From the sequence record LR745206.1: a stretch of DNA of 64,000 nt. One strand, given 5' to 3'. The stretch's first letter is position 1. Each line of letters starts with the position of its first letter. This document shows, in pieces, positions 999-26,737 of the stretch. The position numbers were made by a program, and so were the translations under genes. Below the pieces are notes generated by a model that saw only the letters and a list, made by a program, of their open reading frames with translations, was not told the DNA's origin and made no database searches.

Positions 999-1002
999 CT
1001 TC

Positions 1003-1164
1003 ATGGATAATATAACTACACATAAAGACCCAACAGAAAACTACACACCAGTAGGTCAAACATTCTGTAAGGGTAAATGCGATACGAAAGCTATAAGAAC
1101 GAAAGAAGGTCTTGTTGTTCTTTGTGATGGATGTAAAAGGGTTGTTATTGATAATAGAGATTAG
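1003..1164 (+). CDS. small Cys-rich (zinc-finger-like) protein, 53 aa
   Basis: Hand-translated MDNITTH...FCKGKC...LCDGCKRVVIDNRD; below ORF-track cutoff. Confidence 0.65.
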   Translation: MDNITTHKDPTENYTPVGQTFCKGKCDTKAIRTKEGLVVLCDGCKRVVIDNRD

Positions 1165-1529
1165 TGGAATATTTACCAGGTATAATAGATGAAAGTCTTC
1201 AAAAATTAAATTATTTTGAAATATTAAATGATTTTAATGTACCATTGTACCCTAATAGATTCGATGATGATATTTCAAACAATGATATTACGGATTCAAT
1301 AGAATTTAAAGGTGGTGAAATATTAATTCTTAGATGGTTTAAACCAAAAACAACAAGAACACTTTATAGTTTTGTGGTTGGATATTATAAATCAGATAAG
1401 TACCATGAGGTTAAAAGAGAATGTCCTATGAGTATGGATTTTGTTTCTATCAATACTGCTATACTTAATAATATAACCAATTCATTTGTAAGAGAATTGA
1501 AGATAGATTCTATATTATATGGTTTGTAG
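1164..1529 (+). CDS. hypothetical protein with C-terminal RxxK motif
   Basis: Ends VRELKIDSILYGL. Confidence 0.65.
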   Translation: MEYLPGIIDESLQKLNYFEILNDFNVPLYPNRFDDDISNNDITDSIEFKGGEILILRWFKPKTTRTLYSFVVGYYKSDKYHEVKRECPMSMDFVSINTAILNNITNSFVRELKIDSILYGL

Positions 1530-1791
1530 ATGTAAGTTAAATTTTATGATGAAGGATTTTCACTTTATTGATGGTGAAATCTATGATTATGATTATGATA
1601 GTCATGAAGAAACTGGAATTTTGATTTTTTATATAAAAGGTAGAAGATTATCATTTTCAACAGGTCTTCCATTTGTTGATGGTAAGCTTCCGATGGTAGA
1701 AGATAAATTCCGGAAGTATTTCGATGATTTACAATATTTAAGAGAAGAAAAATTAAAACAATTATTTGATGATATTAGCGAAAACAGTTAA
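1519..1791 (+). CDS. hypothetical protein with C-terminal RxxK motif
   Basis: Ends LREEKLKQLFDDISENS. Confidence 0.6.
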   Translation: MVCRCKLNFMMKDFHFIDGEIYDYDYDSHEETGILIFYIKGRRLSFSTGLPFVDGKLPMVEDKFRKYFDDLQYLREEKLKQLFDDISENS

Positions 1792-2326
1792 ACAGATTAC
1801 ATTATTAAATGTAATCATATTTATATTAGCATATATGACGGATTTTTCATTCTATGATCAATTCGCACTTTTTCCTGGTGATGGTCAACCACACCAATAT
1901 ATAACACATATGTTTCTACATGCTGGATTCACACACATCTTATTTAATATGTTAGCTTTTCTGTCATTTGGATCAGATGTTGAGAATTACTTTGGTAGAA
2001 ATAAATTTATAGTATTTTATCTATTATCAGGAATTGGAGCAGCACTTTTACATATCGTATTAACGGGAAGTCAATCTCCTATGGTTGGTGCTTCCGGTGC
2101 TATATTTGGTGTATTAGCAGCATCTGCAATTATTCACCCAGAACAAAAATTTTATGTATTTTTCATATTACCAATAAAGGCTAAATGGATAATGCCAATA
2201 CTAATAACAATAGAATTATATCTAGGAATAGTGTATAGTGATGGGAACATAGCCCACTTTGCTCATATTGGAGGAGCAATAACTGGAACATTATTTCTAC
2301 TAATTAACAAATATTTAAAAAAATGA
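1766..2326 (+). CDS. rhomboid family intramembrane serine protease
   Basis: FLHAG-x-x-H-x-x-FNM, GASGAIFG catalytic Ser, AHFAHIGG catalytic His, multiple TM segments. Confidence 0.92.
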   Translation: MMILAKTVKQITLLNVIIFILAYMTDFSFYDQFALFPGDGQPHQYITHMFLHAGFTHILFNMLAFLSFGSDVENYFGRNKFIVFYLLSGIGAALLHIVLTGSQSPMVGASGAIFGVLAASAIIHPEQKFYVFFILPIKAKWIMPILITIELYLGIVYSDGNIAHFAHIGGAITGTLFLLINKYLKK

Positions 2327-2883
2327 AACATCTACTAATATTAGATTTGGATGAAGCTTTATGGCACTCTGTTTATAACAGTGAGGTTAGTAAAGAAAGT
2401 TATGATTTTATCAAGAATTCTTTTGATGTTCTTGGTATGTACAGAACTATGCTTCGACCACATCTACAAGAATTTCTTGATTATGCTTTTGAAAATTTTG
2501 ATGTTGCTATTTGGACAGCTGCTGGTAAGGGGTATGCTGAGTTTGTTCTAAATGAAATGAATCTAGATATCACAAAGTTAAAATTCTTTTACACAGAGAA
2601 GAATTGTACACCTAAATATGATTATGGTGAAGGTTGGGGTATGGGTCAAATGGTTTATAAAAAGAGTATCAGTAAGTTAAGTAAAAAGGGTTATGATATG
2701 GATAAAGTGTTGATGGTTGATGATAAACCAGAACACATTGATTCTTATGGGAATGTTATTAAAATAAAAGCTTTTTATGGTGATTCTGATGATACTGAAT
2801 TATTAAAATTGATAAAATATTTGGATAAAATAAAAGATGAACCAAACATTAGAAGTATCGAGAAAAGAGATTGGTCTAATTAA
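2323..2883 (+). CDS. HAD-superfamily NIF/FCP1-like phosphatase
   Basis: LILDLDE, RPHLQEFL, WTAA, MVDDKP motifs. Confidence 0.85.
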   Translation: MKHLLILDLDEALWHSVYNSEVSKESYDFIKNSFDVLGMYRTMLRPHLQEFLDYAFENFDVAIWTAAGKGYAEFVLNEMNLDITKLKFFYTEKNCTPKYDYGEGWGMGQMVYKKSISKLSKKGYDMDKVLMVDDKPEHIDSYGNVIKIKAFYGDSDDTELLKLIKYLDKIKDEPNIRSIEKRDWSN

Positions 2884-2893
2884 TACATATAAA

Positions 2894-3217
2894 ATGAAAA
2901 AAATATTAACAATATTATTGATGTTTTTGTCGAGTTTATTATACTCACAAACTGTTTGTACAGATACTATATTTGCTCCTAACGCCTTTACACCAACATT
3001 AACAACAAATAATAAATTTATACCTTATATAAATTATTATACTGACTATCAGATGGTTATCTATAATAGATGGGGTTATTTAATTTATAGTGGTAAAGAA
3101 TGGGATGGTACATATAAAGGTACTTTGTGCCAACAAACAACATATATCTGGGAAATAAAAGCTTATGGATCAGAATGTGAAAGAAATTTTAGAGGAATGG
3201 TTGTGTTGATTAGGTAA
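2894..3217 (+). CDS. signal peptide plus T9SS type-B (CHU_C / gliding-motility-associated) C-terminal domain
   Basis: MKKILTILLMFLSSLLYSQ then PNAFTP, IYNRWG, WDG, TYxW, FRGMVVLIR. Confidence 0.85.
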   Translation: MKKILTILLMFLSSLLYSQTVCTDTIFAPNAFTPTLTTNNKFIPYINYYTDYQMVIYNRWGYLIYSGKEWDGTYKGTLCQQTTYIWEIKAYGSECERNFRGMVVLIR

Positions 3218-3245
3218 ATTAATAATTTTTTATTATATTTGTTCT

Positions 3246-3596
3246 ATGATGGCACCAGATAGAATTGAGTTATTTATTGATAAGAAGATACAAGGATTTT
3301 TGTTCGATGGAGAATCATATGATTTTGTCATTGATAATCTTAAAGAATGTATTGAAAGATTTAAGAATAAAGATACATTTATAAATGTAAGTAAGAGATA
3401 TCTCCTAAATAACTGGTCACAAATCGCTTTTAAAAAAAGATATACAGCTTATTATGTTATGTATTCAACTAAAAGATTACATGATATGGAATGGATTGTC
3501 AAAAGCACCAGTAAATTCCCAACATACCAAAGAAGTAAAATGTTTAGTCTTGTCCAATTAAAGGATAAGTTATCAGAACAAAAATCATCATGTTAG
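3246..3596 (+). CDS. hypothetical protein
   Basis: ORF preceded by TATATTTG 3234-3241. Confidence 0.65.
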   Translation: MMAPDRIELFIDKKIQGFLFDGESYDFVIDNLKECIERFKNKDTFINVSKRYLLNNWSQIAFKKRYTAYYVMYSTKRLHDMEWIVKSTSKFPTYQRSKMFSLVQLKDKLSEQKSSC

Positions 3597-4288
3597 AATT
3601 TTTTATAAGTTTACAAGTTGATGATGATTTCGGTGTTCCTCAAAATTCTTGGGGACCAATTTCTCCTTATATACCCAGTGGTTTGTTATGTATAATTGGT
3701 AATTTTGCGAAAGTAAATCCTGATATTTTTGATAGAAAAGATTTTTTTAAACCTATCGAATCCATAATTAGAAATAACATCAATATAAATGATTTATCAA
3801 AAAAAGATATTGAGAAAATAATGTCTAAATTTGGTGATTATGAAATGAATTCAGATGTTATGAAATTCAATCCTGATAACTATTATGATTTAGATCAAAT
3901 ATTTATTGATAAAAATAAAAATGATACTAGAATAAGTATTAGATATCTTAATTGCCCAATTAATTCATTTTACTTATTACAAGAAGGAAACGCACTAAAA
4001 GTTATAATAAGTCCATTCACACAAAACTATTATTCGATTACTGAAACAGAATGGTTAGAATTTCTAAACTATTTAAAAGAAAAAATTGGCATATCTGAAT
4101 TAAGAGATATTAAATTAAATCAAATTTTTGATGAAAAACCTAACAAATCCGTAAATTTAATAAGACAGCTTAGATTTAAGTTAAATAAAAGCTCTGATAG
4201 ATTTTTAAATAGTGTCTTAGATTTTTATGAAAAAAGAGGATATTTATCTGATAAACAATACAATTCTGTAGCTAAGAATATTTGGTAA
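3590..4288 (+). CDS. hypothetical protein
   Basis: Internal LRDIKLNQIF motif followed by a short tail FLNSVLDFYEKRGYLSDKQ. Confidence 0.65.
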   Translation: MLEFFISLQVDDDFGVPQNSWGPISPYIPSGLLCIIGNFAKVNPDIFDRKDFFKPIESIIRNNININDLSKKDIEKIMSKFGDYEMNSDVMKFNPDNYYDLDQIFIDKNKNDTRISIRYLNCPINSFYLLQEGNALKVIISPFTQNYYSITETEWLEFLNYLKEKIGISELRDIKLNQIFDEKPNKSVNLIRQLRFKLNKSSDRFLNSVLDFYEKRGYLSDKQYNSVAKNIW

Positions 4289-4314
4289 TTCATATATTTT
4301 CCGTATATTTGTGT

Positions 4315-4539
4315 ATGGGAAATAAGAAAGAAATACTATGGTCAGTTCTTGAAAAGTATGATGGTTTATCAAATTTAAGTAGATTTTGTGATTCTATTTC
4401 CAATTTCATCCAAAATAAACAAGATGGTAATGATATAATCAATGTATATCGATCATTGGACACAATTGAACAATCTGATAGAAAAAAAATAAATATCACA
4501 ATTGGTGGTGATATAGACGCTTTTCTCTTTAGTATCTAA
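4315..4539 (+). CDS. hypothetical protein
   Basis: ATG4315 just after TATATTTG 4304-4311. Confidence 0.55.
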   Translation: MGNKKEILWSVLEKYDGLSNLSRFCDSISNFIQNKQDGNDIINVYRSLDTIEQSDRKKINITIGGDIDAFLFSI

Positions 4540-4622
4540 GTTCATGTAACATCATGATACCTTATTATTATATAACTTGGCGGTTTTTTATTGTTTAAAA
4601 CCTCTGGATTTTTTATGGTTAA

Positions 4623-5510
4623 TTAATCTATACAAGATGGTGGTTTTTTCATTCTTTTAAACTTCCAATGCAGGTTTTCCCAATCTTTTATTTCAGCATC
4701 TAACTTAACAATCTCTTCACCCCAATCTTGGAACTCTTCTTGCTTTCTTTCTAAATCTCTAACTAAATCATTTATTTCCGATTCTCTTTCTAAAAGTTTA
4801 TCCTCTCTCTTTTTGATACTTTTTAGACCTACTTCTAAATCCTTTTCTTTCTCTGAAACAATTTTCAAATCTTTGTCAATCTTTGATTGTAGCTCACCAT
4901 ATTTAGAATCGATATCTTTTGATGATTCTAAAATAGTTCTGTCTAGATTCCTCTCCTTTTCGTTTATATCTTGTAGTTTATCCTGTACATCTAACTCTCT
5001 TTCAACTAAATCTCTAGATTTTTCTCTTAAATCATCTTCTTTCTTATCTAATAATTTAAGATCCTCTTTATAGTCTTTCTCTCTCTTATCAACCCTACCA
5101 AGTCTTATTTCAACTTCCTCTTCCTTACTTTTAATCCTTCTTTCTCTACTATCTAATTCAGACTCTTTATTTTCAATTTCTTTTAGTCTCTCCTCATCAA
5201 CTTGAATACCTGTATCAGAAAGATTCATAGATGAAAGTATCATATCTTCTATGAATGGGATTAATTTCTTACCTAATTGTGCTGGTTGCGGCATTTTATT
5301 CATCTTCATATAAGACATCAACTCAGCTTTCCAGTCTATATTTTCAAAAAATTCAGGATTATTATCAATAATATCTCTATCAATCTGTATTAACTCATCT
5401 TTAACCTTATAAATATATTCTTCTAGAATAGTTCCTATTTTAAGAATAAAAATCTTCTTCTCCGGACTAAGATATTGAAATTCCTTTATTACCTTATGTT
5501 TTATTTTCAT
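4623..5510 (-). CDS. long coiled-coil protein
   Basis: E/K/R-rich heptad pattern; ATG5510 with a TTTATATATA element upstream. Confidence 0.7.
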   Translation of the reverse strand: MKIKHKVIKEFQYLSPEKKIFILKIGTILEEYIYKVKDELIQIDRDIIDNNPEFFENIDWKAELMSYMKMNKMPQPAQLGKKLIPFIEDMILSSMNLSDTGIQVDEERLKEIENKESELDSRERRIKSKEEEVEIRLGRVDKREKDYKEDLKLLDKKEDDLREKSRDLVERELDVQDKLQDINEKERNLDRTILESSKDIDSKYGELQSKIDKDLKIVSEKEKDLEVGLKSIKKREDKLLERESEINDLVRDLERKQEEFQDWGEEIVKLDAEIKDWENLHWKFKRMKKPPSCID

Positions 5511-5584
5511 AATAATTTTACTCAATTTTTATTATATATAAAAAACCTTTGTTTTTCTTTCAATTTTACGTATATTTGTTAATT

Positions 5585-6508: not shown

Positions 6509-6912
6509 TAAAGGAAAAAATAGAAGAGGTTATTGAAAACCTAATAATAAATACCGAATTGGGAACACTAGTTTGGGAGGAAGGTGATACCAAAGATAGA
6601 AGATATGAGAGGTGTTTAATTTCTTATGGTGAGGATGGTACTCAGTTTGAGATAGAAATAAAATATACTTTAATTAATAACAAATGGAAATTTGATGATT
6701 CTAAGTATATTTGGGTACGTAATAAAAAACTACCAAAGGGACATTATTATGGATCGACCGATTCTGTTATGAAACTTAAAGAGATTTTACTAAAAAAATA
6801 TTGCCAAGATTTAAATCCAAGTGAGAGCGATGTTGCTGATATACTTGGTGAGATATCCAAGGGTATATCATTATCAACATATAGGGATAATAAACTAAAT
6901 AAAATTTTATGA
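6505..6912 (+). CDS. hypothetical protein with C-terminal RxxK motif
   Basis: Ends YRDNKLNKIL. Confidence 0.65.
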   Translation: MIKEKIEEVIENLIINTELGTLVWEEGDTKDRRYERCLISYGEDGTQFEIEIKYTLINNKWKFDDSKYIWVRNKKLPKGHYYGSTDSVMKLKEILLKKYCQDLNPSESDVADILGEISKGISLSTYRDNKLNKIL

Positions 6913-7550
6913 AAAATGCTTGGAAACTATTTGATTATGGTGAGACTCCAATCTATCTAAAATATTGGTTTTTAGGTCTTTTTCTATTCATACCAGTGAG
7001 CTTAGTATTGATGATATTTGTATCTATACTTATACATGAAATGGCTCATGTCCGTACAGCTAGAAAATTAGGATACAATACAGATTATATTTTTATAGAT
7101 ATATTACATGGTGGTGCTTTGGTAGATTCCAAACACGGTGATAACAACAAACACGCTATATCAGTAGCTTTAGCAGGTCCAACATCCAATTTGATATTAG
7201 CATTAATTATAACTTTAGGTACAACAATATTTACATCATTTAGTCCGGATAATATAGATTCACCAATAATTCCATTTTTAGCAGAATTTATCGGTATTAA
7301 TTTAATATTATTTATTGCTAATTTAATACCAATATACCCACTTGATGGTGGTAGGATAAGTAAAGCATTTTCAAAAATGTGTTTTGGTGAAAATAAAGGT
7401 AGAGTTATAAATGGTATAATCTCAATGATTTTATCTTTTTGTGTTTTGAGTTATGGTATAATAAAGGTTGATTTTATATGGATAATATTCTCAGTAATAT
7501 TTATTATAACATCATATGGTGAAATTAAATCAAAAAAAGATGAACTTTGA
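6909..7550 (+). CDS. M50 family site-2 intramembrane metalloprotease
   Basis: HEMAH, LAGP, NLIPIYPLDGGRI, TM helices. Confidence 0.92.
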   Translation: MKNAWKLFDYGETPIYLKYWFLGLFLFIPVSLVLMIFVSILIHEMAHVRTARKLGYNTDYIFIDILHGGALVDSKHGDNNKHAISVALAGPTSNLILALIITLGTTIFTSFSPDNIDSPIIPFLAEFIGINLILFIANLIPIYPLDGGRISKAFSKMCFGENKGRVINGIISMILSFCVLSYGIIKVDFIWIIFSVIFIITSYGEIKSKKDEL

Positions 7551-26650: not shown

Positions 26651-26724
26651 GGTCTTTTAGCTCAGTCGGTTAGAGCGCCTCGCTCATAACGAGGATGTCG
26701 TAGGTTCGAGCCCTACAAAGACCA
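26651..26724 (+). tRNA. tRNA with CAT anticodon (Ile2 or elongator Met)
   Basis: Cloverleaf GGTCTTT/AAAGACC, CCTCG-CTCATAA-CGAGG, TTCGA loop; G1-C72 so not initiator; followed by CAA rather than CCA. Confidence 0.93.
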
Positions 26725-26737
26725 CAAAATTGAAAAA

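What the first reader, a model, noticed from the sequence alone, without database searches (positions are those of the whole stretch)
2894..3217. Cargo-less T9SS type-B sorting domain: possible secretion-system decoy
Seen: a Sec-type signal peptide followed after ~8 residues by a complete CHU_C-type CTD (PNAFTP...IYNRWG...WDG...TYxW...FRGMVVLIR), with no passenger domain. Established: type-B CTDs route proteins such as the gliding adhesin SprB through the Bacteroidota T9SS with PorP/SprF-like partners, and gliding/T9SS surface components have been linked to phage susceptibility in Flavobacterium. Inference: the phage exports an empty CTD to titrate or jam T9SS export, giving superinfection exclusion or stopping host gliding. 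It also independently points to a Bacteroidota host.
Basis: partly seen in the sequence, partly recalled or inferred. Interest (0 to 1): 0.75.

Follow-up and report, generated by a model that had tools for sequence, protein, structure and literature searches.

The report
Phage-encoded passenger-less T9SS sorting domain
A giant phage of Bacteroidota carries a small, conserved gene that makes only an export signal peptide plus a type-B "type IX secretion" sorting domain with no passenger, most likely a cargo-free ligand for the host's scarce outer-membrane shuttle proteins, although what it does has not been tested.

Summary
Window 2894-3217 (+) encodes a 107-aa protein: an 18-residue Sec signal peptide cut before Gln, 7 residues, then a complete CHU_C / type-B T9SS sorting domain (Pfam 34.6 bits, cutoff 27; TIGR04131 33.5 bits, just under its cutoff of 35). 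There is no passenger.

The gene is real. At least 25 sequence clusters of 92-126 aa share this architecture and evolve under purifying selection. They lie in conserved synteny in relatives of this 634-kb megaphage (LR745206.1). None was found in 185,579 bacterial species genomes.

Three findings change the interpretation:
- The same phage encodes three large adhesin-like type-B substrates (832, 732 and 1205 aa).
- It encodes no PorP/SprF shuttle.
- In 5 of 8 phage contexts the small gene sits directly after a cargo-bearing type-B gene, with stop/start overlap. In bacteria a porP/sprF gene occupies that slot.

A general T9SS jam would therefore block the phage's own exports. Published work shows type-B shuttles are scarce, specific and not recycled. 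The best reading is a cargo-free ligand that occupies one host shuttle class; a partner role for the phage adhesins is the main rival. The Bacteroidota host inference is supported. I rate it a new variant of a known kind.

The parts
2894..3217 (+). Gene for the 107-aa passenger-less type-B CTD protein (stop codon included)
   Evidence: ORF. Pfam CHU_C and TIGR04131. Homologues of 92-126 aa. dN/dS 0.2-0.5.
2894..2947 (+). Sec-type signal peptide, residues 1-18, with predicted signal peptidase I cut between Ser18 and Gln19 (Bacteroidetes Q-rule)
   Evidence: By inspection: n-region MKK, a 13-residue hydrophobic core, L at -3 and S at -1. All 25 family members with an N-terminus have [S/A/G] then Q after 18-20 residues. 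AF2 models residues 2-15 as a helix. The Q-rule is described in PMC5837995.
2948..2968 (+). Seven-residue N-terminal stub of the mature protein (Gln19-Thr25), including Cys22
   Evidence: Cys22 and Asp24 are invariant in alignment A1, including in cargo-bearing relatives where they close the preceding domain. Cys22 co-occurs with Cys95 in 18 of 18 main-clade members, and both are absent in 4 of 6 of the short clade. A disulfide is inferred from this.
2969..3214 (+). CHU_C / type-B T9SS sorting domain core, residues 26-107
   Evidence: Profile coverage is nearly complete. Every position invariant across 56 short and cargo-bearing relatives is kept: N30 F32 P34 N39 R59 W70 G72. The AF2 model has pLDDT 92.3, with four strands at 51-57, 63-67, 83-91 and 96-105 facing a less regular N-terminal part. 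This is the shape that PMC12618676 describes for type-B CTDs.
2323..2883 (+). Upstream neighbour: NIF/FCP1-like phosphatase gene (context, same strand, 10-nt spacer)
   Evidence: Pfam NIF at 111 bits. The Rhomboid-NIF-...-CTD-only order is kept in L001, L016, L018, L020 and L064.
3246..3596 (+). Downstream neighbour: conserved 116-aa gene of unknown function (context)
   Evidence: A 115-129 aa gene follows the CTD-only gene in all related loci. In LR756502.1 its homologue directly follows a 1670-aa CHU_C protein and the small gene is absent.

Best explanation
The gene makes a stand-alone type-B T9SS sorting domain. Sec exports the protein to the host periplasm, and signal peptidase I cuts it to an 89-residue product starting with Gln. 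That product is essentially the conserved CTD core. Because it keeps every family-invariant residue, it most likely binds what type-B CTDs bind: a PorP/SprF-like outer-membrane shuttle at the SprA translocon. The phage encodes no such shuttle, so the target would be a host one. With no passenger, its effect would be to occupy (cap or titrate) one class of these scarce, single-use shuttles. That would change which adhesins the infected cell displays. It would act on one shuttle class only, not jam the whole T9SS. Shown here: the gene is real, conserved and under purifying selection; the architecture; the phage's own cargo-bearing type-B proteins; and the absence of a phage shuttle. Inferred: shuttle binding, which shuttle, whether the protein crosses the outer membrane, and the benefit to the phage.
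For: The domain is complete and the invariant residues are kept. The fold model is confident and of type-B shape. The Sec signal with Q-rule is present in all 25 family N-termini. dN/dS is 0.2-0.5. The family is held in conserved synteny across at least 8 phage contexts and also in a distant marine megaphage-like protein. A profile built from 31 bacterial PorP/SprF ORFs found nothing among 5172 ORFs of the whole phage and its relatives, whereas 28 of 41 bacterial type-B loci have a PorP/SprF ORF directly downstream. Small CTDs form their own clade: 44-56% identity to each other and 30-44% to the phage's big CTDs, which fits a different shuttle specificity. The literature supports the mechanism. 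Type-B CTDs need cognate shuttles, and those shuttles are low in abundance, stoichiometric and not recycled (PMC12618676). Type-B CTDs stay bound to PorP-like proteins, and PG1035 was proposed to act as a cap for PorP (PMC9143113).
Against: There is no binding, localisation or expression data. In F. johnsoniae the region needed for efficient type-B secretion of a reporter is 150-235 aa, longer than this whole protein (PMC12618676), so export across the outer membrane is uncertain. The phage has three type-B substrates of its own that would compete for shuttles. In 5 of 8 contexts the small gene is coupled to a cargo-bearing type-B gene. That linkage points at least as much to a partnership as to competition. 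The TIGR04131 score is just under its cutoff.
Confidence: 0.4

Rival explanations
1. It is a partner subunit of the phage's own type-B adhesin-like proteins. The small CTD is made together with a cargo-bearing type-B protein. It acts with that protein, for example as a second CTD that pairs with the big protein's CTD or occupies a second site on the shuttle/PorE-type anchor. Its role would be to aid or tune display of the phage protein, not to block host export.
For: A cargo-bearing CHU_C gene lies immediately upstream in 5 of 8 phage contexts, including a different phage type (L063). The junctions are ATGA or TAATG overlaps or spacers of 5 nt or less. In bacteria this slot holds the shuttle gene. 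Proteins made of a signal peptide plus two tandem CTD-like domains exist (P0127, P0128), so two CTDs can work together in one chain. Bacterial small CHU_C genes also sit next to big CHU_C genes (L019, L027).
Against: In this window, in L020 and in L001 the small gene is kept without any adjacent cargo gene; here the nearest one is about 80 kb away. LR756502.1 keeps the large gene but has lost the small one. No CTD-CTD interaction of type-B domains is documented.
Confidence: 0.22
2. It is a general T9SS decoy or jam. The empty CTD clogs the SprA translocon or all shuttles and shuts down T9SS export, which stops gliding and excludes other phages.
For: The CTD is complete and has no cargo. T9SS and gliding mutations are linked to phage resistance in Flavobacterium (10.1101/2020.10.02.323337 and PMC9804748). 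Huge-phage surface proteins were suggested to affect susceptibility to other phages (PMC7162821).
Against: The phage itself encodes three large type-B substrates with signal peptides. Relatives co-express the small gene with such a substrate. Type-B recognition is pair-specific (PMC12618676). Type-A export uses PorV, which is abundant or recycled.
Confidence: 0.1
3. It is a periplasmic signalling ligand. Like the CTD of PorA, which binds the sensor kinase PorY in the periplasm and raises T9SS gene expression, the free CTD would stay in the periplasm. There it would act on a host sensor to raise T9SS or shuttle expression for the phage's own cargo.
For: There is a precedent that a CTD can act as a regulator apart from its role as a secretion signal (PMC12152298). 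The phage lacks shuttles and would gain from more host shuttle. The protein is shorter than the region reported as needed for secretion.
Against: PorA carries a PorV-bound, A-LPS-linked (type-A pathway) CTD, not a type-B one. There is no sequence likeness to it, and no sensor partner is known for type-B CTDs.
Confidence: 0.08
4. It is a small exported beta-sandwich with a role unrelated to T9SS, for example binding a glycan or another envelope protein, or it is a decaying remnant of a larger gene.
For: Function is untested. The TIGR04131 score is below cutoff. The loop after PNAFTP differs from that of the phage's large CTDs, and the domain is about 10 residues shorter.
Against: All family-invariant CTD residues are retained. 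There is purifying selection and wide conservation with its own signal peptide. The family occurs only with Bacteroidota-type signals.
Confidence: 0.12

Closest known systems
Type-B T9SS C-terminal domains (CHU_C, PF13585 / TIGR04131), e.g. of SprB and the other F. johnsoniae type-B substrates
   Same: Same domain family by profile, with nearly full profile coverage and all invariant residues. The domain sits at the extreme C-terminus and is preceded by a Sec signal peptide. The predicted fold has a four-strand sheet facing a less regular part (PMC12618676).
   Different: There is no passenger; the mature protein is 89 aa, whereas known substrates have hundreds to thousands of residues. It lacks the upstream stretch reported as needed for efficient secretion (150-235 aa). 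No cognate porP/sprF gene is present beside it or anywhere in the phage. The loop after PNAFTP differs from that of the phage's large CTDs, and the domain is about 10 residues shorter.
PG1035 of Porphyromonas gingivalis (type-B CTD protein bound to PorP-PorE)
   Same: It is a type-B CTD protein whose CTD stays uncleaved and bound to PorP. It is dispensable for secretion and was proposed to be a stabilising or protective cap for PorP (PMC9143113). This is the nearest published idea to a CTD whose job is to occupy a shuttle.
   Different: PG1035 is about 50 kDa and host-encoded, and it sits in the T9SS core. The present protein is about 10 kDa and phage-encoded. No direct comparison of the two sequences was made.
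PorA of P. gingivalis (CTD acting as ligand of the sensor kinase PorY)
   Same: It shows that a T9SS CTD can have a function of its own besides being a sorting signal (PMC12152298).
   Different: PorA uses the type-A pathway (PorV-bound, A-LPS-linked), has a non-CTD part, and is host-encoded. No homology was found here.
Phage-encoded T9SS cargo proteins (type-A CTDs in the cryoconite 'Cryophage'; T9SS sorting-domain ORFs in crAss-like contigs)
   Same: These are phages of Bacteroidota that encode proteins carrying T9SS sorting domains, presumed to hijack the host system (PMC7468147; PMC6949934).
   Different: Those carry enzymes or binding domains as cargo and have type-A CTDs where stated. 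Here the CTD is type B and, in the small gene, has no cargo.
Bacterial small CHU_C proteins of about 141-146 aa (P0062, P0075, P0088; L027 5806-6312)
   Same: They consist of a signal peptide with Q-rule, a very short N-terminal piece and a type-B CTD. They are encoded next to large CHU_C genes and, in L019, on the same strand as a PorP_SprF gene.
   Different: They carry a conserved N-terminal piece of about 35 residues and the loop form seen in the phage's large CTDs. They share only about 31-42% identity with the window protein, lie on bacterial chromosome-size contigs, and have unknown function.
GhpA grappling-hook protein of Aureispira (PDB 9flp and related entries)
   Same: It is the only solved-structure entry whose sequence matches the family profile: residues 5800-5887 of 5898, E 6e-16. 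It is a giant Bacteroidota surface protein ending in a CHU_C domain.
   Different: It is a 5898-residue cargo protein. Foldseek did not return it as a structural match, so the deposited models may not cover the CTD.

Membership tests
T9SS type-B sorting domain (Pfam CHU_C PF13585) | Profile match at or above Pfam's gathering score | tested here: met
   34.6 bits against a cutoff of 27, E 2.2e-8, profile 3-84 of 86.
T9SS type-B sorting domain (NCBIfam TIGR04131) | Profile match at or above the curated cutoff | tested here: not met
   33.5 bits against a cutoff of 35, a miss of 1.5 bits, with E 3.3e-8 and full profile coverage 3-85 of 85. All 7 close homologues match at E <= 1e-3.
T9SS type-B sorting domain | Domain at the extreme C-terminus of a protein with an N-terminal Sec signal peptide | tested here: met
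   The match ends at the last residue. The signal peptide was judged by inspection and by family-wide conservation of an 18-20-residue signal ending [S/A/G] before Q. No signal-peptide predictor was available.
T9SS type-B sorting domain | Conserved sequence motifs and invariant residues of the CTD core | tested here: met
   N30 F32 P34 N39 R59 W70 G72 are invariant across 56 relatives. P29 F42 N58 W60 G61 D71 Y84 G101 L105 are at least 90% conserved. All are present in the window protein. Motifs A-E of PMC12618676 could not be mapped letter by letter because the figure is not held.
T9SS type-B substrates | A passenger (cargo) region between the signal peptide and the CTD | tested here: not met
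   Only 7 residues lie between the predicted cleavage site and the domain.
T9SS type-B substrates | Cognate porP/sprF-like shuttle gene adjacent (common but not universal; 'orphan' substrates exist) | tested here: not met
   28 of 41 bacterial loci have such a gene directly downstream. No PorP/SprF-like ORF was found in the window, in the rest of LR745206.1 or in six related phage loci, where the best E was 0.07.
T9SS type-B substrates | Secretion signal length found sufficient in F. johnsoniae reporter assays (150-235 aa) | tested here: not met
   The mature protein is 89 aa. The length requirement comes from PMC12618676.
T9SS type-B substrates | T9SS- and shuttle-dependent transport and binding to a PorP/SprF-like protein | not testable with these tools
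T9SS type-B sorting domain | [quoted passage not shown] | tested here: met
   The AF2 model has pLDDT 92.3 and pTM 0.73, with four strands in the C-terminal two-thirds. There are only weak Foldseek hits to type-A CTDs in SprA complexes and to PorU. Six viral predicted structures with CHU_C domains match at E <= 1e-3.
Known anti-phage defence / exclusion proteins (PADLOC) | Match to any PADLOC model | tested here: not met
   No family matched at E <= 0.1.
Bacterial lipoproteins (signal peptidase II substrates) | Cysteine at a fixed place after the hydrophobic core, with small residues before it | tested here: not met
   Across the family the Cys lies 1-9 residues after the conserved [S/A/G]-Q site, with varied residues before it. 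It is absent in five members (P0024, P0027-P0030).

The most novel reading that the evidence does not exclude
Megaphages of Bacteroidota use substrate mimicry against the host's own surface-display system. A free type-B sorting domain, made in excess in the infected cell, takes the single-use PorP/SprF shuttles of the host's gliding or adhesion proteins. The cell then stops displaying them, which would alter gliding or adhesion and remove or mask surface structures that other phages use. Meanwhile the phage's own adhesin-like type-B proteins, with divergent CTDs, use other shuttles. This would be a first natural inhibitor of one branch of the T9SS. It would also define a minimal natural type-B CTD.
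Probability: 0.25. Interest if true: 0.8.

Novelty: new variant of a known kind. Interest (0 to 1): 0.6.

Why it matters
How type-B sorting domains are recognised by their PorP/SprF shuttles is an open problem. No type-B CTD structure is solved, and the residues that set pair specificity are unknown (PMC12618676). A naturally minimal type-B CTD of 80-95 residues, conserved in many variants, is a compact object for predicting and solving CTD-shuttle complexes. It also bears on what the smallest recognised signal is. It further shows that the largest known phages carry a set of T9SS type-B substrates: three adhesin-like proteins plus a passenger-less one. They carry no shuttle, so they must rely on and probably reshape the host's surface-display machinery during infection. 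If the shuttle-occupancy reading is right, it would be a new way for a phage to edit its host's surface. Finally, the four Q-rule signal peptides and type-B CTDs give independent sequence evidence for a T9SS-bearing Bacteroidota host.

Tried and rejected
- **Lipoprotein reading of the invariant Cys.** Rejected. The spacing from the signal peptide varies, the residues before the Cys are not the small ones expected, and five members lack it.
- **Gene fragment or recent duplicate of a big gene's 3' end.** Rejected. The gene has its own signal peptide, the small CTDs form an old separate clade, dN/dS is 0.2-0.5, and the gene is conserved with and without a neighbouring big gene.
- **Phage-encoded shuttle.** A single PorP_SprF query and then a profile built from 31 bacterial ORFs found nothing. 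Two large ORFs with marginal scores (L010 11413-14637, L009 27984-31187) had no Pfam match.
- **Solved-structure comparison.** No Foldseek hit at E <= 1e-3. Only weak likeness to type-A CTDs was seen.
- **PHROGs** gave no significant family and **PADLOC** gave none.
- **Sigma-70 promoter and terminator scan of 1000-5000.** Fewer promoter-like sites than in shuffles and no terminator. The scan is uninformative for Bacteroidota-type promoters.
- **IMG/VR scan.** It returned only the contig already known as L001.
- **Literature.** Searches for phage plus CHU_C and for huge phages plus type IX secretion found no earlier description of this gene.

Full report
**What is there.** Window 2894-3217 on the + strand is an ORF with ATG at 2894 and TAA at 3215-3217, giving 107 residues. 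A longer reading from 2837 overlaps the upstream gene, and the homologues begin at the Met of 2894. The product matches Pfam CHU_C (PF13585, "Type IX secretion signal domain") with E 2.2e-8 and 34.6 bits against a gathering score of 27, over residues 28-103 and profile positions 3-84 of 86. It matches NCBIfam TIGR04131 (T9SS type B sorting domain) with E 3.3e-8 and 33.5 bits. That is 1.5 bits under the curated cutoff of 35, over the whole profile. It is the only such ORF among 441 six-frame ORFs of the window, and the window holds no N.

The N-terminus has two lysines, a 13-residue hydrophobic core, and Leu at -3 and Ser at -1 before Gln19. I judged this by eye because no signal-peptide predictor is available. 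Seven residues then precede the domain.

**Where it comes from.** The window is identical to LR745206.1 positions 496001 onward, an uncultured phage of 634,780 bp. It is one of the largest curated phage genomes. [quoted passage not shown] To look for related genes I read the rest of that record as thirteen separate pieces. I searched each piece on its own and never joined them.

**The gene is real and conserved.** A single-sequence search found six relatives of 105-125 aa at 54-83% identity, all CHU_C only. A profile of these found about 30 clusters of 92-126 aa scoring at least 96 bits, followed by a score gap. In all 25 members that have an N-terminus, the signal peptide is 18-20 residues and ends [S/A/G] before Gln. 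The mature protein is 80-95 residues.

A Gln after the cut is the Bacteroidetes "Q-rule" for signal peptidase I substrates (PMC5837995). It has been noted before in phage proteins of P. gingivalis (PMC10367356). Pairwise dN/dS between five orthologues is 0.20-0.49, and 0.32 for the closest pair.

Every position that is invariant across 56 short and cargo-bearing relatives is present in the window protein. These are N30, F32, P34, N39, R59, W70 and G72, and the same holds for the positions that are at least 90% conserved. Cys22 and Cys95 co-occur in 18 of 18 main-clade members and are both missing in 4 of 6 of a shorter clade. I read this as a probable disulfide, which fits an exported protein (inference).

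AlphaFold2 with a 56-sequence alignment gives pLDDT 92.3 and pTM 0.73. The model has a signal-peptide helix and four strands (51-57, 63-67, 83-91, 96-105) facing a less regular N-terminal part. This is how PMC12618676 describes predicted type-B CTDs, none of which is solved. Foldseek against the PDB gives no hit at E <= 1e-3. It gives only weak likeness to type-A CTDs caught in SprA translocon complexes and to PorU. By sequence, the only solved entry is the giant Aureispira grappling-hook protein GhpA, whose last 90 residues match.

**Distribution.**
- In one representative genome for each of 185,579 bacterial and archaeal species, 41 loci encode relatives. All are from Bacteroidota except one MAG labelled Bifidobacterium, which I take to be mis-binned. 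The best identity is 41%, and none belongs to the tight small family.
- The small family sits on phage contigs. L001 is an IMG/VR viral contig.
- L016/L017, L018, L020, L064 and L068 share the topoisomerase-RlaP-DUF6576-Rhomboid-NIF synteny of the window.
- L063 is a different phage-like contig.
- The best viral structural match is a 108-aa protein of an uncultured marine phage at 42% identity.
- A second lineage of passenger-less CTD genes (P0031, P0104) lies between PolyA_pol and 2H-SAK genes on other huge-phage-like contigs. Their loop after PNAFTP is of the form seen in the large CTDs.
- In the 1.84-billion-protein library, 40,185 proteins match the profile at E <= 0.001. Most of the best hits are C-termini of proteins of hundreds to thousands of residues. 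Several further ~106-122-aa proteins match from residue 1, and two proteins consist of a signal peptide plus two tandem CTD-like domains.
- Bacteria also have nearly passenger-less versions. A 141-146-aa family with a ~35-residue N-terminal piece lies on chromosome-size contigs, next to large CHU_C genes. In L019 it is on the same strand as a PorP_SprF gene.

The architecture is thus recurrent and not unique to this phage. The tight family itself appears to be phage-borne.

**New context that bears on function.**

First, the same phage encodes three more CHU_C proteins, all outside the window and all large:
- 832 aa, with a glycine-rich domain, Ig_7, two PKD domains and CHU_C.
- 732 aa, with an SprB repeat, PKD_6 and CHU_C.
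- 1205 aa, with a Reelin-type domain, PKD and CHU_C.

Each has a signal peptide ending before Gln.

Second, the phage has no recognisable shuttle. In 28 of 41 bacterial loci, a PorP/SprF-like ORF starts right after the CHU_C gene. A profile built from those ORFs finds nothing among 5172 ORFs of the whole phage, the window and six related phage loci; the best E is 0.07.

Third, the small CTDs form their own clade. They are 44-56% identical across phages but only 30-44% identical to the big CTDs, which are 43-64% identical to each other. They are therefore old paralogues, not recent copies.

Fourth, in five of eight phage contexts a cargo-bearing CHU_C gene lies immediately upstream of the small gene. 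Its product is 190, 191, 191, 244 or 836 aa, and the last is the orthologue of this phage's 1205-aa protein. The junctions are ATGA or TAATG stop/start overlaps or spacers of at most 5 nt. In the window, L020 and L001 the small gene follows the NIF gene directly. In the sister megaphage LR756502.1, a 1670-aa CHU_C protein is kept, the small gene is absent, and the next gene is the homologue of window 3246-3596.

**How it most likely works.** Published work on F. johnsoniae and P. gingivalis establishes several points:
- Type-B CTDs are recognised by cognate PorP/SprF-like outer-membrane barrels that take the substrate from the SprA translocon.
- The CTD is not cleaved and stays bound to the shuttle at the surface.
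- Pairs are specific, with some crosstalk.
- Endogenous shuttles are barely detectable, so an over-produced CTD fusion is not secreted unless its shuttle is co-produced.
- The authors concluded that substrate and shuttle are stoichiometric and that the shuttle is not recycled (PMC12618676; PMC9143113).

Against that background, a Sec-exported protein that is nothing but an intact CTD core is best explained as a cargo-free ligand for a host shuttle. Each molecule would use up one shuttle. I put this at 0.4. Whether the protein is itself carried to the surface or stays at the periplasmic face is open. The region needed to secrete a reporter in F. johnsoniae (150-235 aa) is longer than this whole protein.

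It would also block the phage's own three large substrates, and relatives co-express the small gene with such a substrate.

The tight linkage raises a serious rival at 0.22: the small CTD is a partner of the phage's adhesin-like proteins. Other rivals are:
- a periplasmic signalling role by analogy with the PorA CTD, which binds PorY (PMC12152298), at 0.08;
- the general jam, at 0.1;
- a role unrelated to T9SS, or decay, at 0.12.

Benefits such as exclusion of other phages or arrest of gliding are inference. T9SS and gliding mutations do give phage resistance in Flavobacterium, and the huge-phage paper suggested that phage surface proteins affect susceptibility to other phages. Nothing here tests either benefit.

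**Comparison and novelty.** By Pfam's criterion, and by position, motifs and predicted fold, this is a member of the type-B CTD domain family. By NCBIfam's cutoff it narrowly misses. As a T9SS substrate it fails three usual features: a passenger, an adjacent shuttle gene, and the length found sufficient for secretion.

The nearest published ideas are PG1035 as a possible cap for PorP (PMC9143113) and the PorA CTD as a ligand in its own right (PMC12152298). Phage-encoded T9SS cargo has been reported for type-A CTDs (PMC7468147) and noted in crAss-like contigs (PMC6949934). My searches found no description of phage type-B substrates or of a passenger-less CTD family. I rate it a new variant of a known kind, with interest 0.6.

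No signal-peptide predictor, complex prediction, model coordinates, expression data or host genome were available. The dN/dS values come from a simple Nei-Gojobori count on an AT-rich gene with saturated synonymous sites for the distant pairs.

I used them only to decide what to check. None was used as a query or as evidence, and the statements above rest on the sequences returned by the tools.

Noticed in passing
window 1766-2326, 2323-2883 and 6909-7550: A rhomboid intramembrane protease, a NIF/FCP1-like phosphatase and an M50 (site-2-type) peptidase flank the CTD-only gene. The same order is kept in all related phage contigs. Two intramembrane proteases next to exported proteins suggest a conserved envelope-directed module.
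   Followed up: partly
LR745206.1 outside the window: L003 15118-17613 (-), L003 25768-27963 (+), L014 19814-23428 (-): Three large adhesin-like proteins (832, 732 and 1205 aa) have PKD/Ig/SprB-repeat/Reelin-type domains, Q-rule signal peptides and type-B CTDs. The megaphage therefore encodes its own set of T9SS type-B substrates.
   Followed up: yes
L016 8868-10004, L064 7858-9001, L068 1044-2189: In three related phages, two short genes (PKD_6, about 186 aa; CHU_C, about 190 aa) match consecutive parts of this phage's 732-aa protein. Each has its own signal peptide.
   Followed up: partly
L066 7001-7351 and L067 7001-7378: A second, separate lineage of passenger-less type-B CTD genes (116 and 125 aa) lies between a PolyA_pol/CCA-type gene and a 2H-SAK gene on other huge-phage-like contigs. 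Their loop after PNAFTP is of the form seen in the large CTDs.
   Followed up: partly
P0127 and P0128 (223 and 227 aa, metagenomic): These proteins consist of a Q-rule signal peptide followed by two tandem CTD-like domains and nothing else. The first domain is divergent. Their genomic context could not be looked up.
   Followed up: no
L019 8001-10783; L027 5806-11587: A bacterial family of 141-146-aa CHU_C proteins with a conserved N-terminal piece of about 35 residues lies beside large CHU_C genes. In L019 it is upstream of a PorP_SprF gene on the same strand. Its function is unknown, and it may be a host counterpart of the phage gene.
   Followed up: partly
L062 (LR756502.1 513118-525387), 1261-6273 and 6316-6681: The sister 642-kb megaphage has a 1670-aa SprB-repeat-like CHU_C protein directly followed by the homologue of window ORF 3246-3596. 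There is no CTD-only gene between them.
   Followed up: yes
L003 30020-31981 (-) and L003 23338-24192 (-): The phage encodes an EF-G-like protein of 654 aa with all EF-G domains. It also encodes a 285-aa protein matching the catalytic domain of Glu/Gln-tRNA synthetases. Both lie close to two of the type-B adhesin-like genes.
   Followed up: no
window 26651-26725: A single tRNA-Met (CAT) gene is the only tRNA in the 64-kb window.
   Followed up: no
window 4623-5525 (-): A 300-aa Lys/Glu-rich ORF that looks like a coiled coil lies on the opposite strand, in an otherwise same-strand gene array. It has only a sub-threshold OmpH-like match.
   Followed up: no
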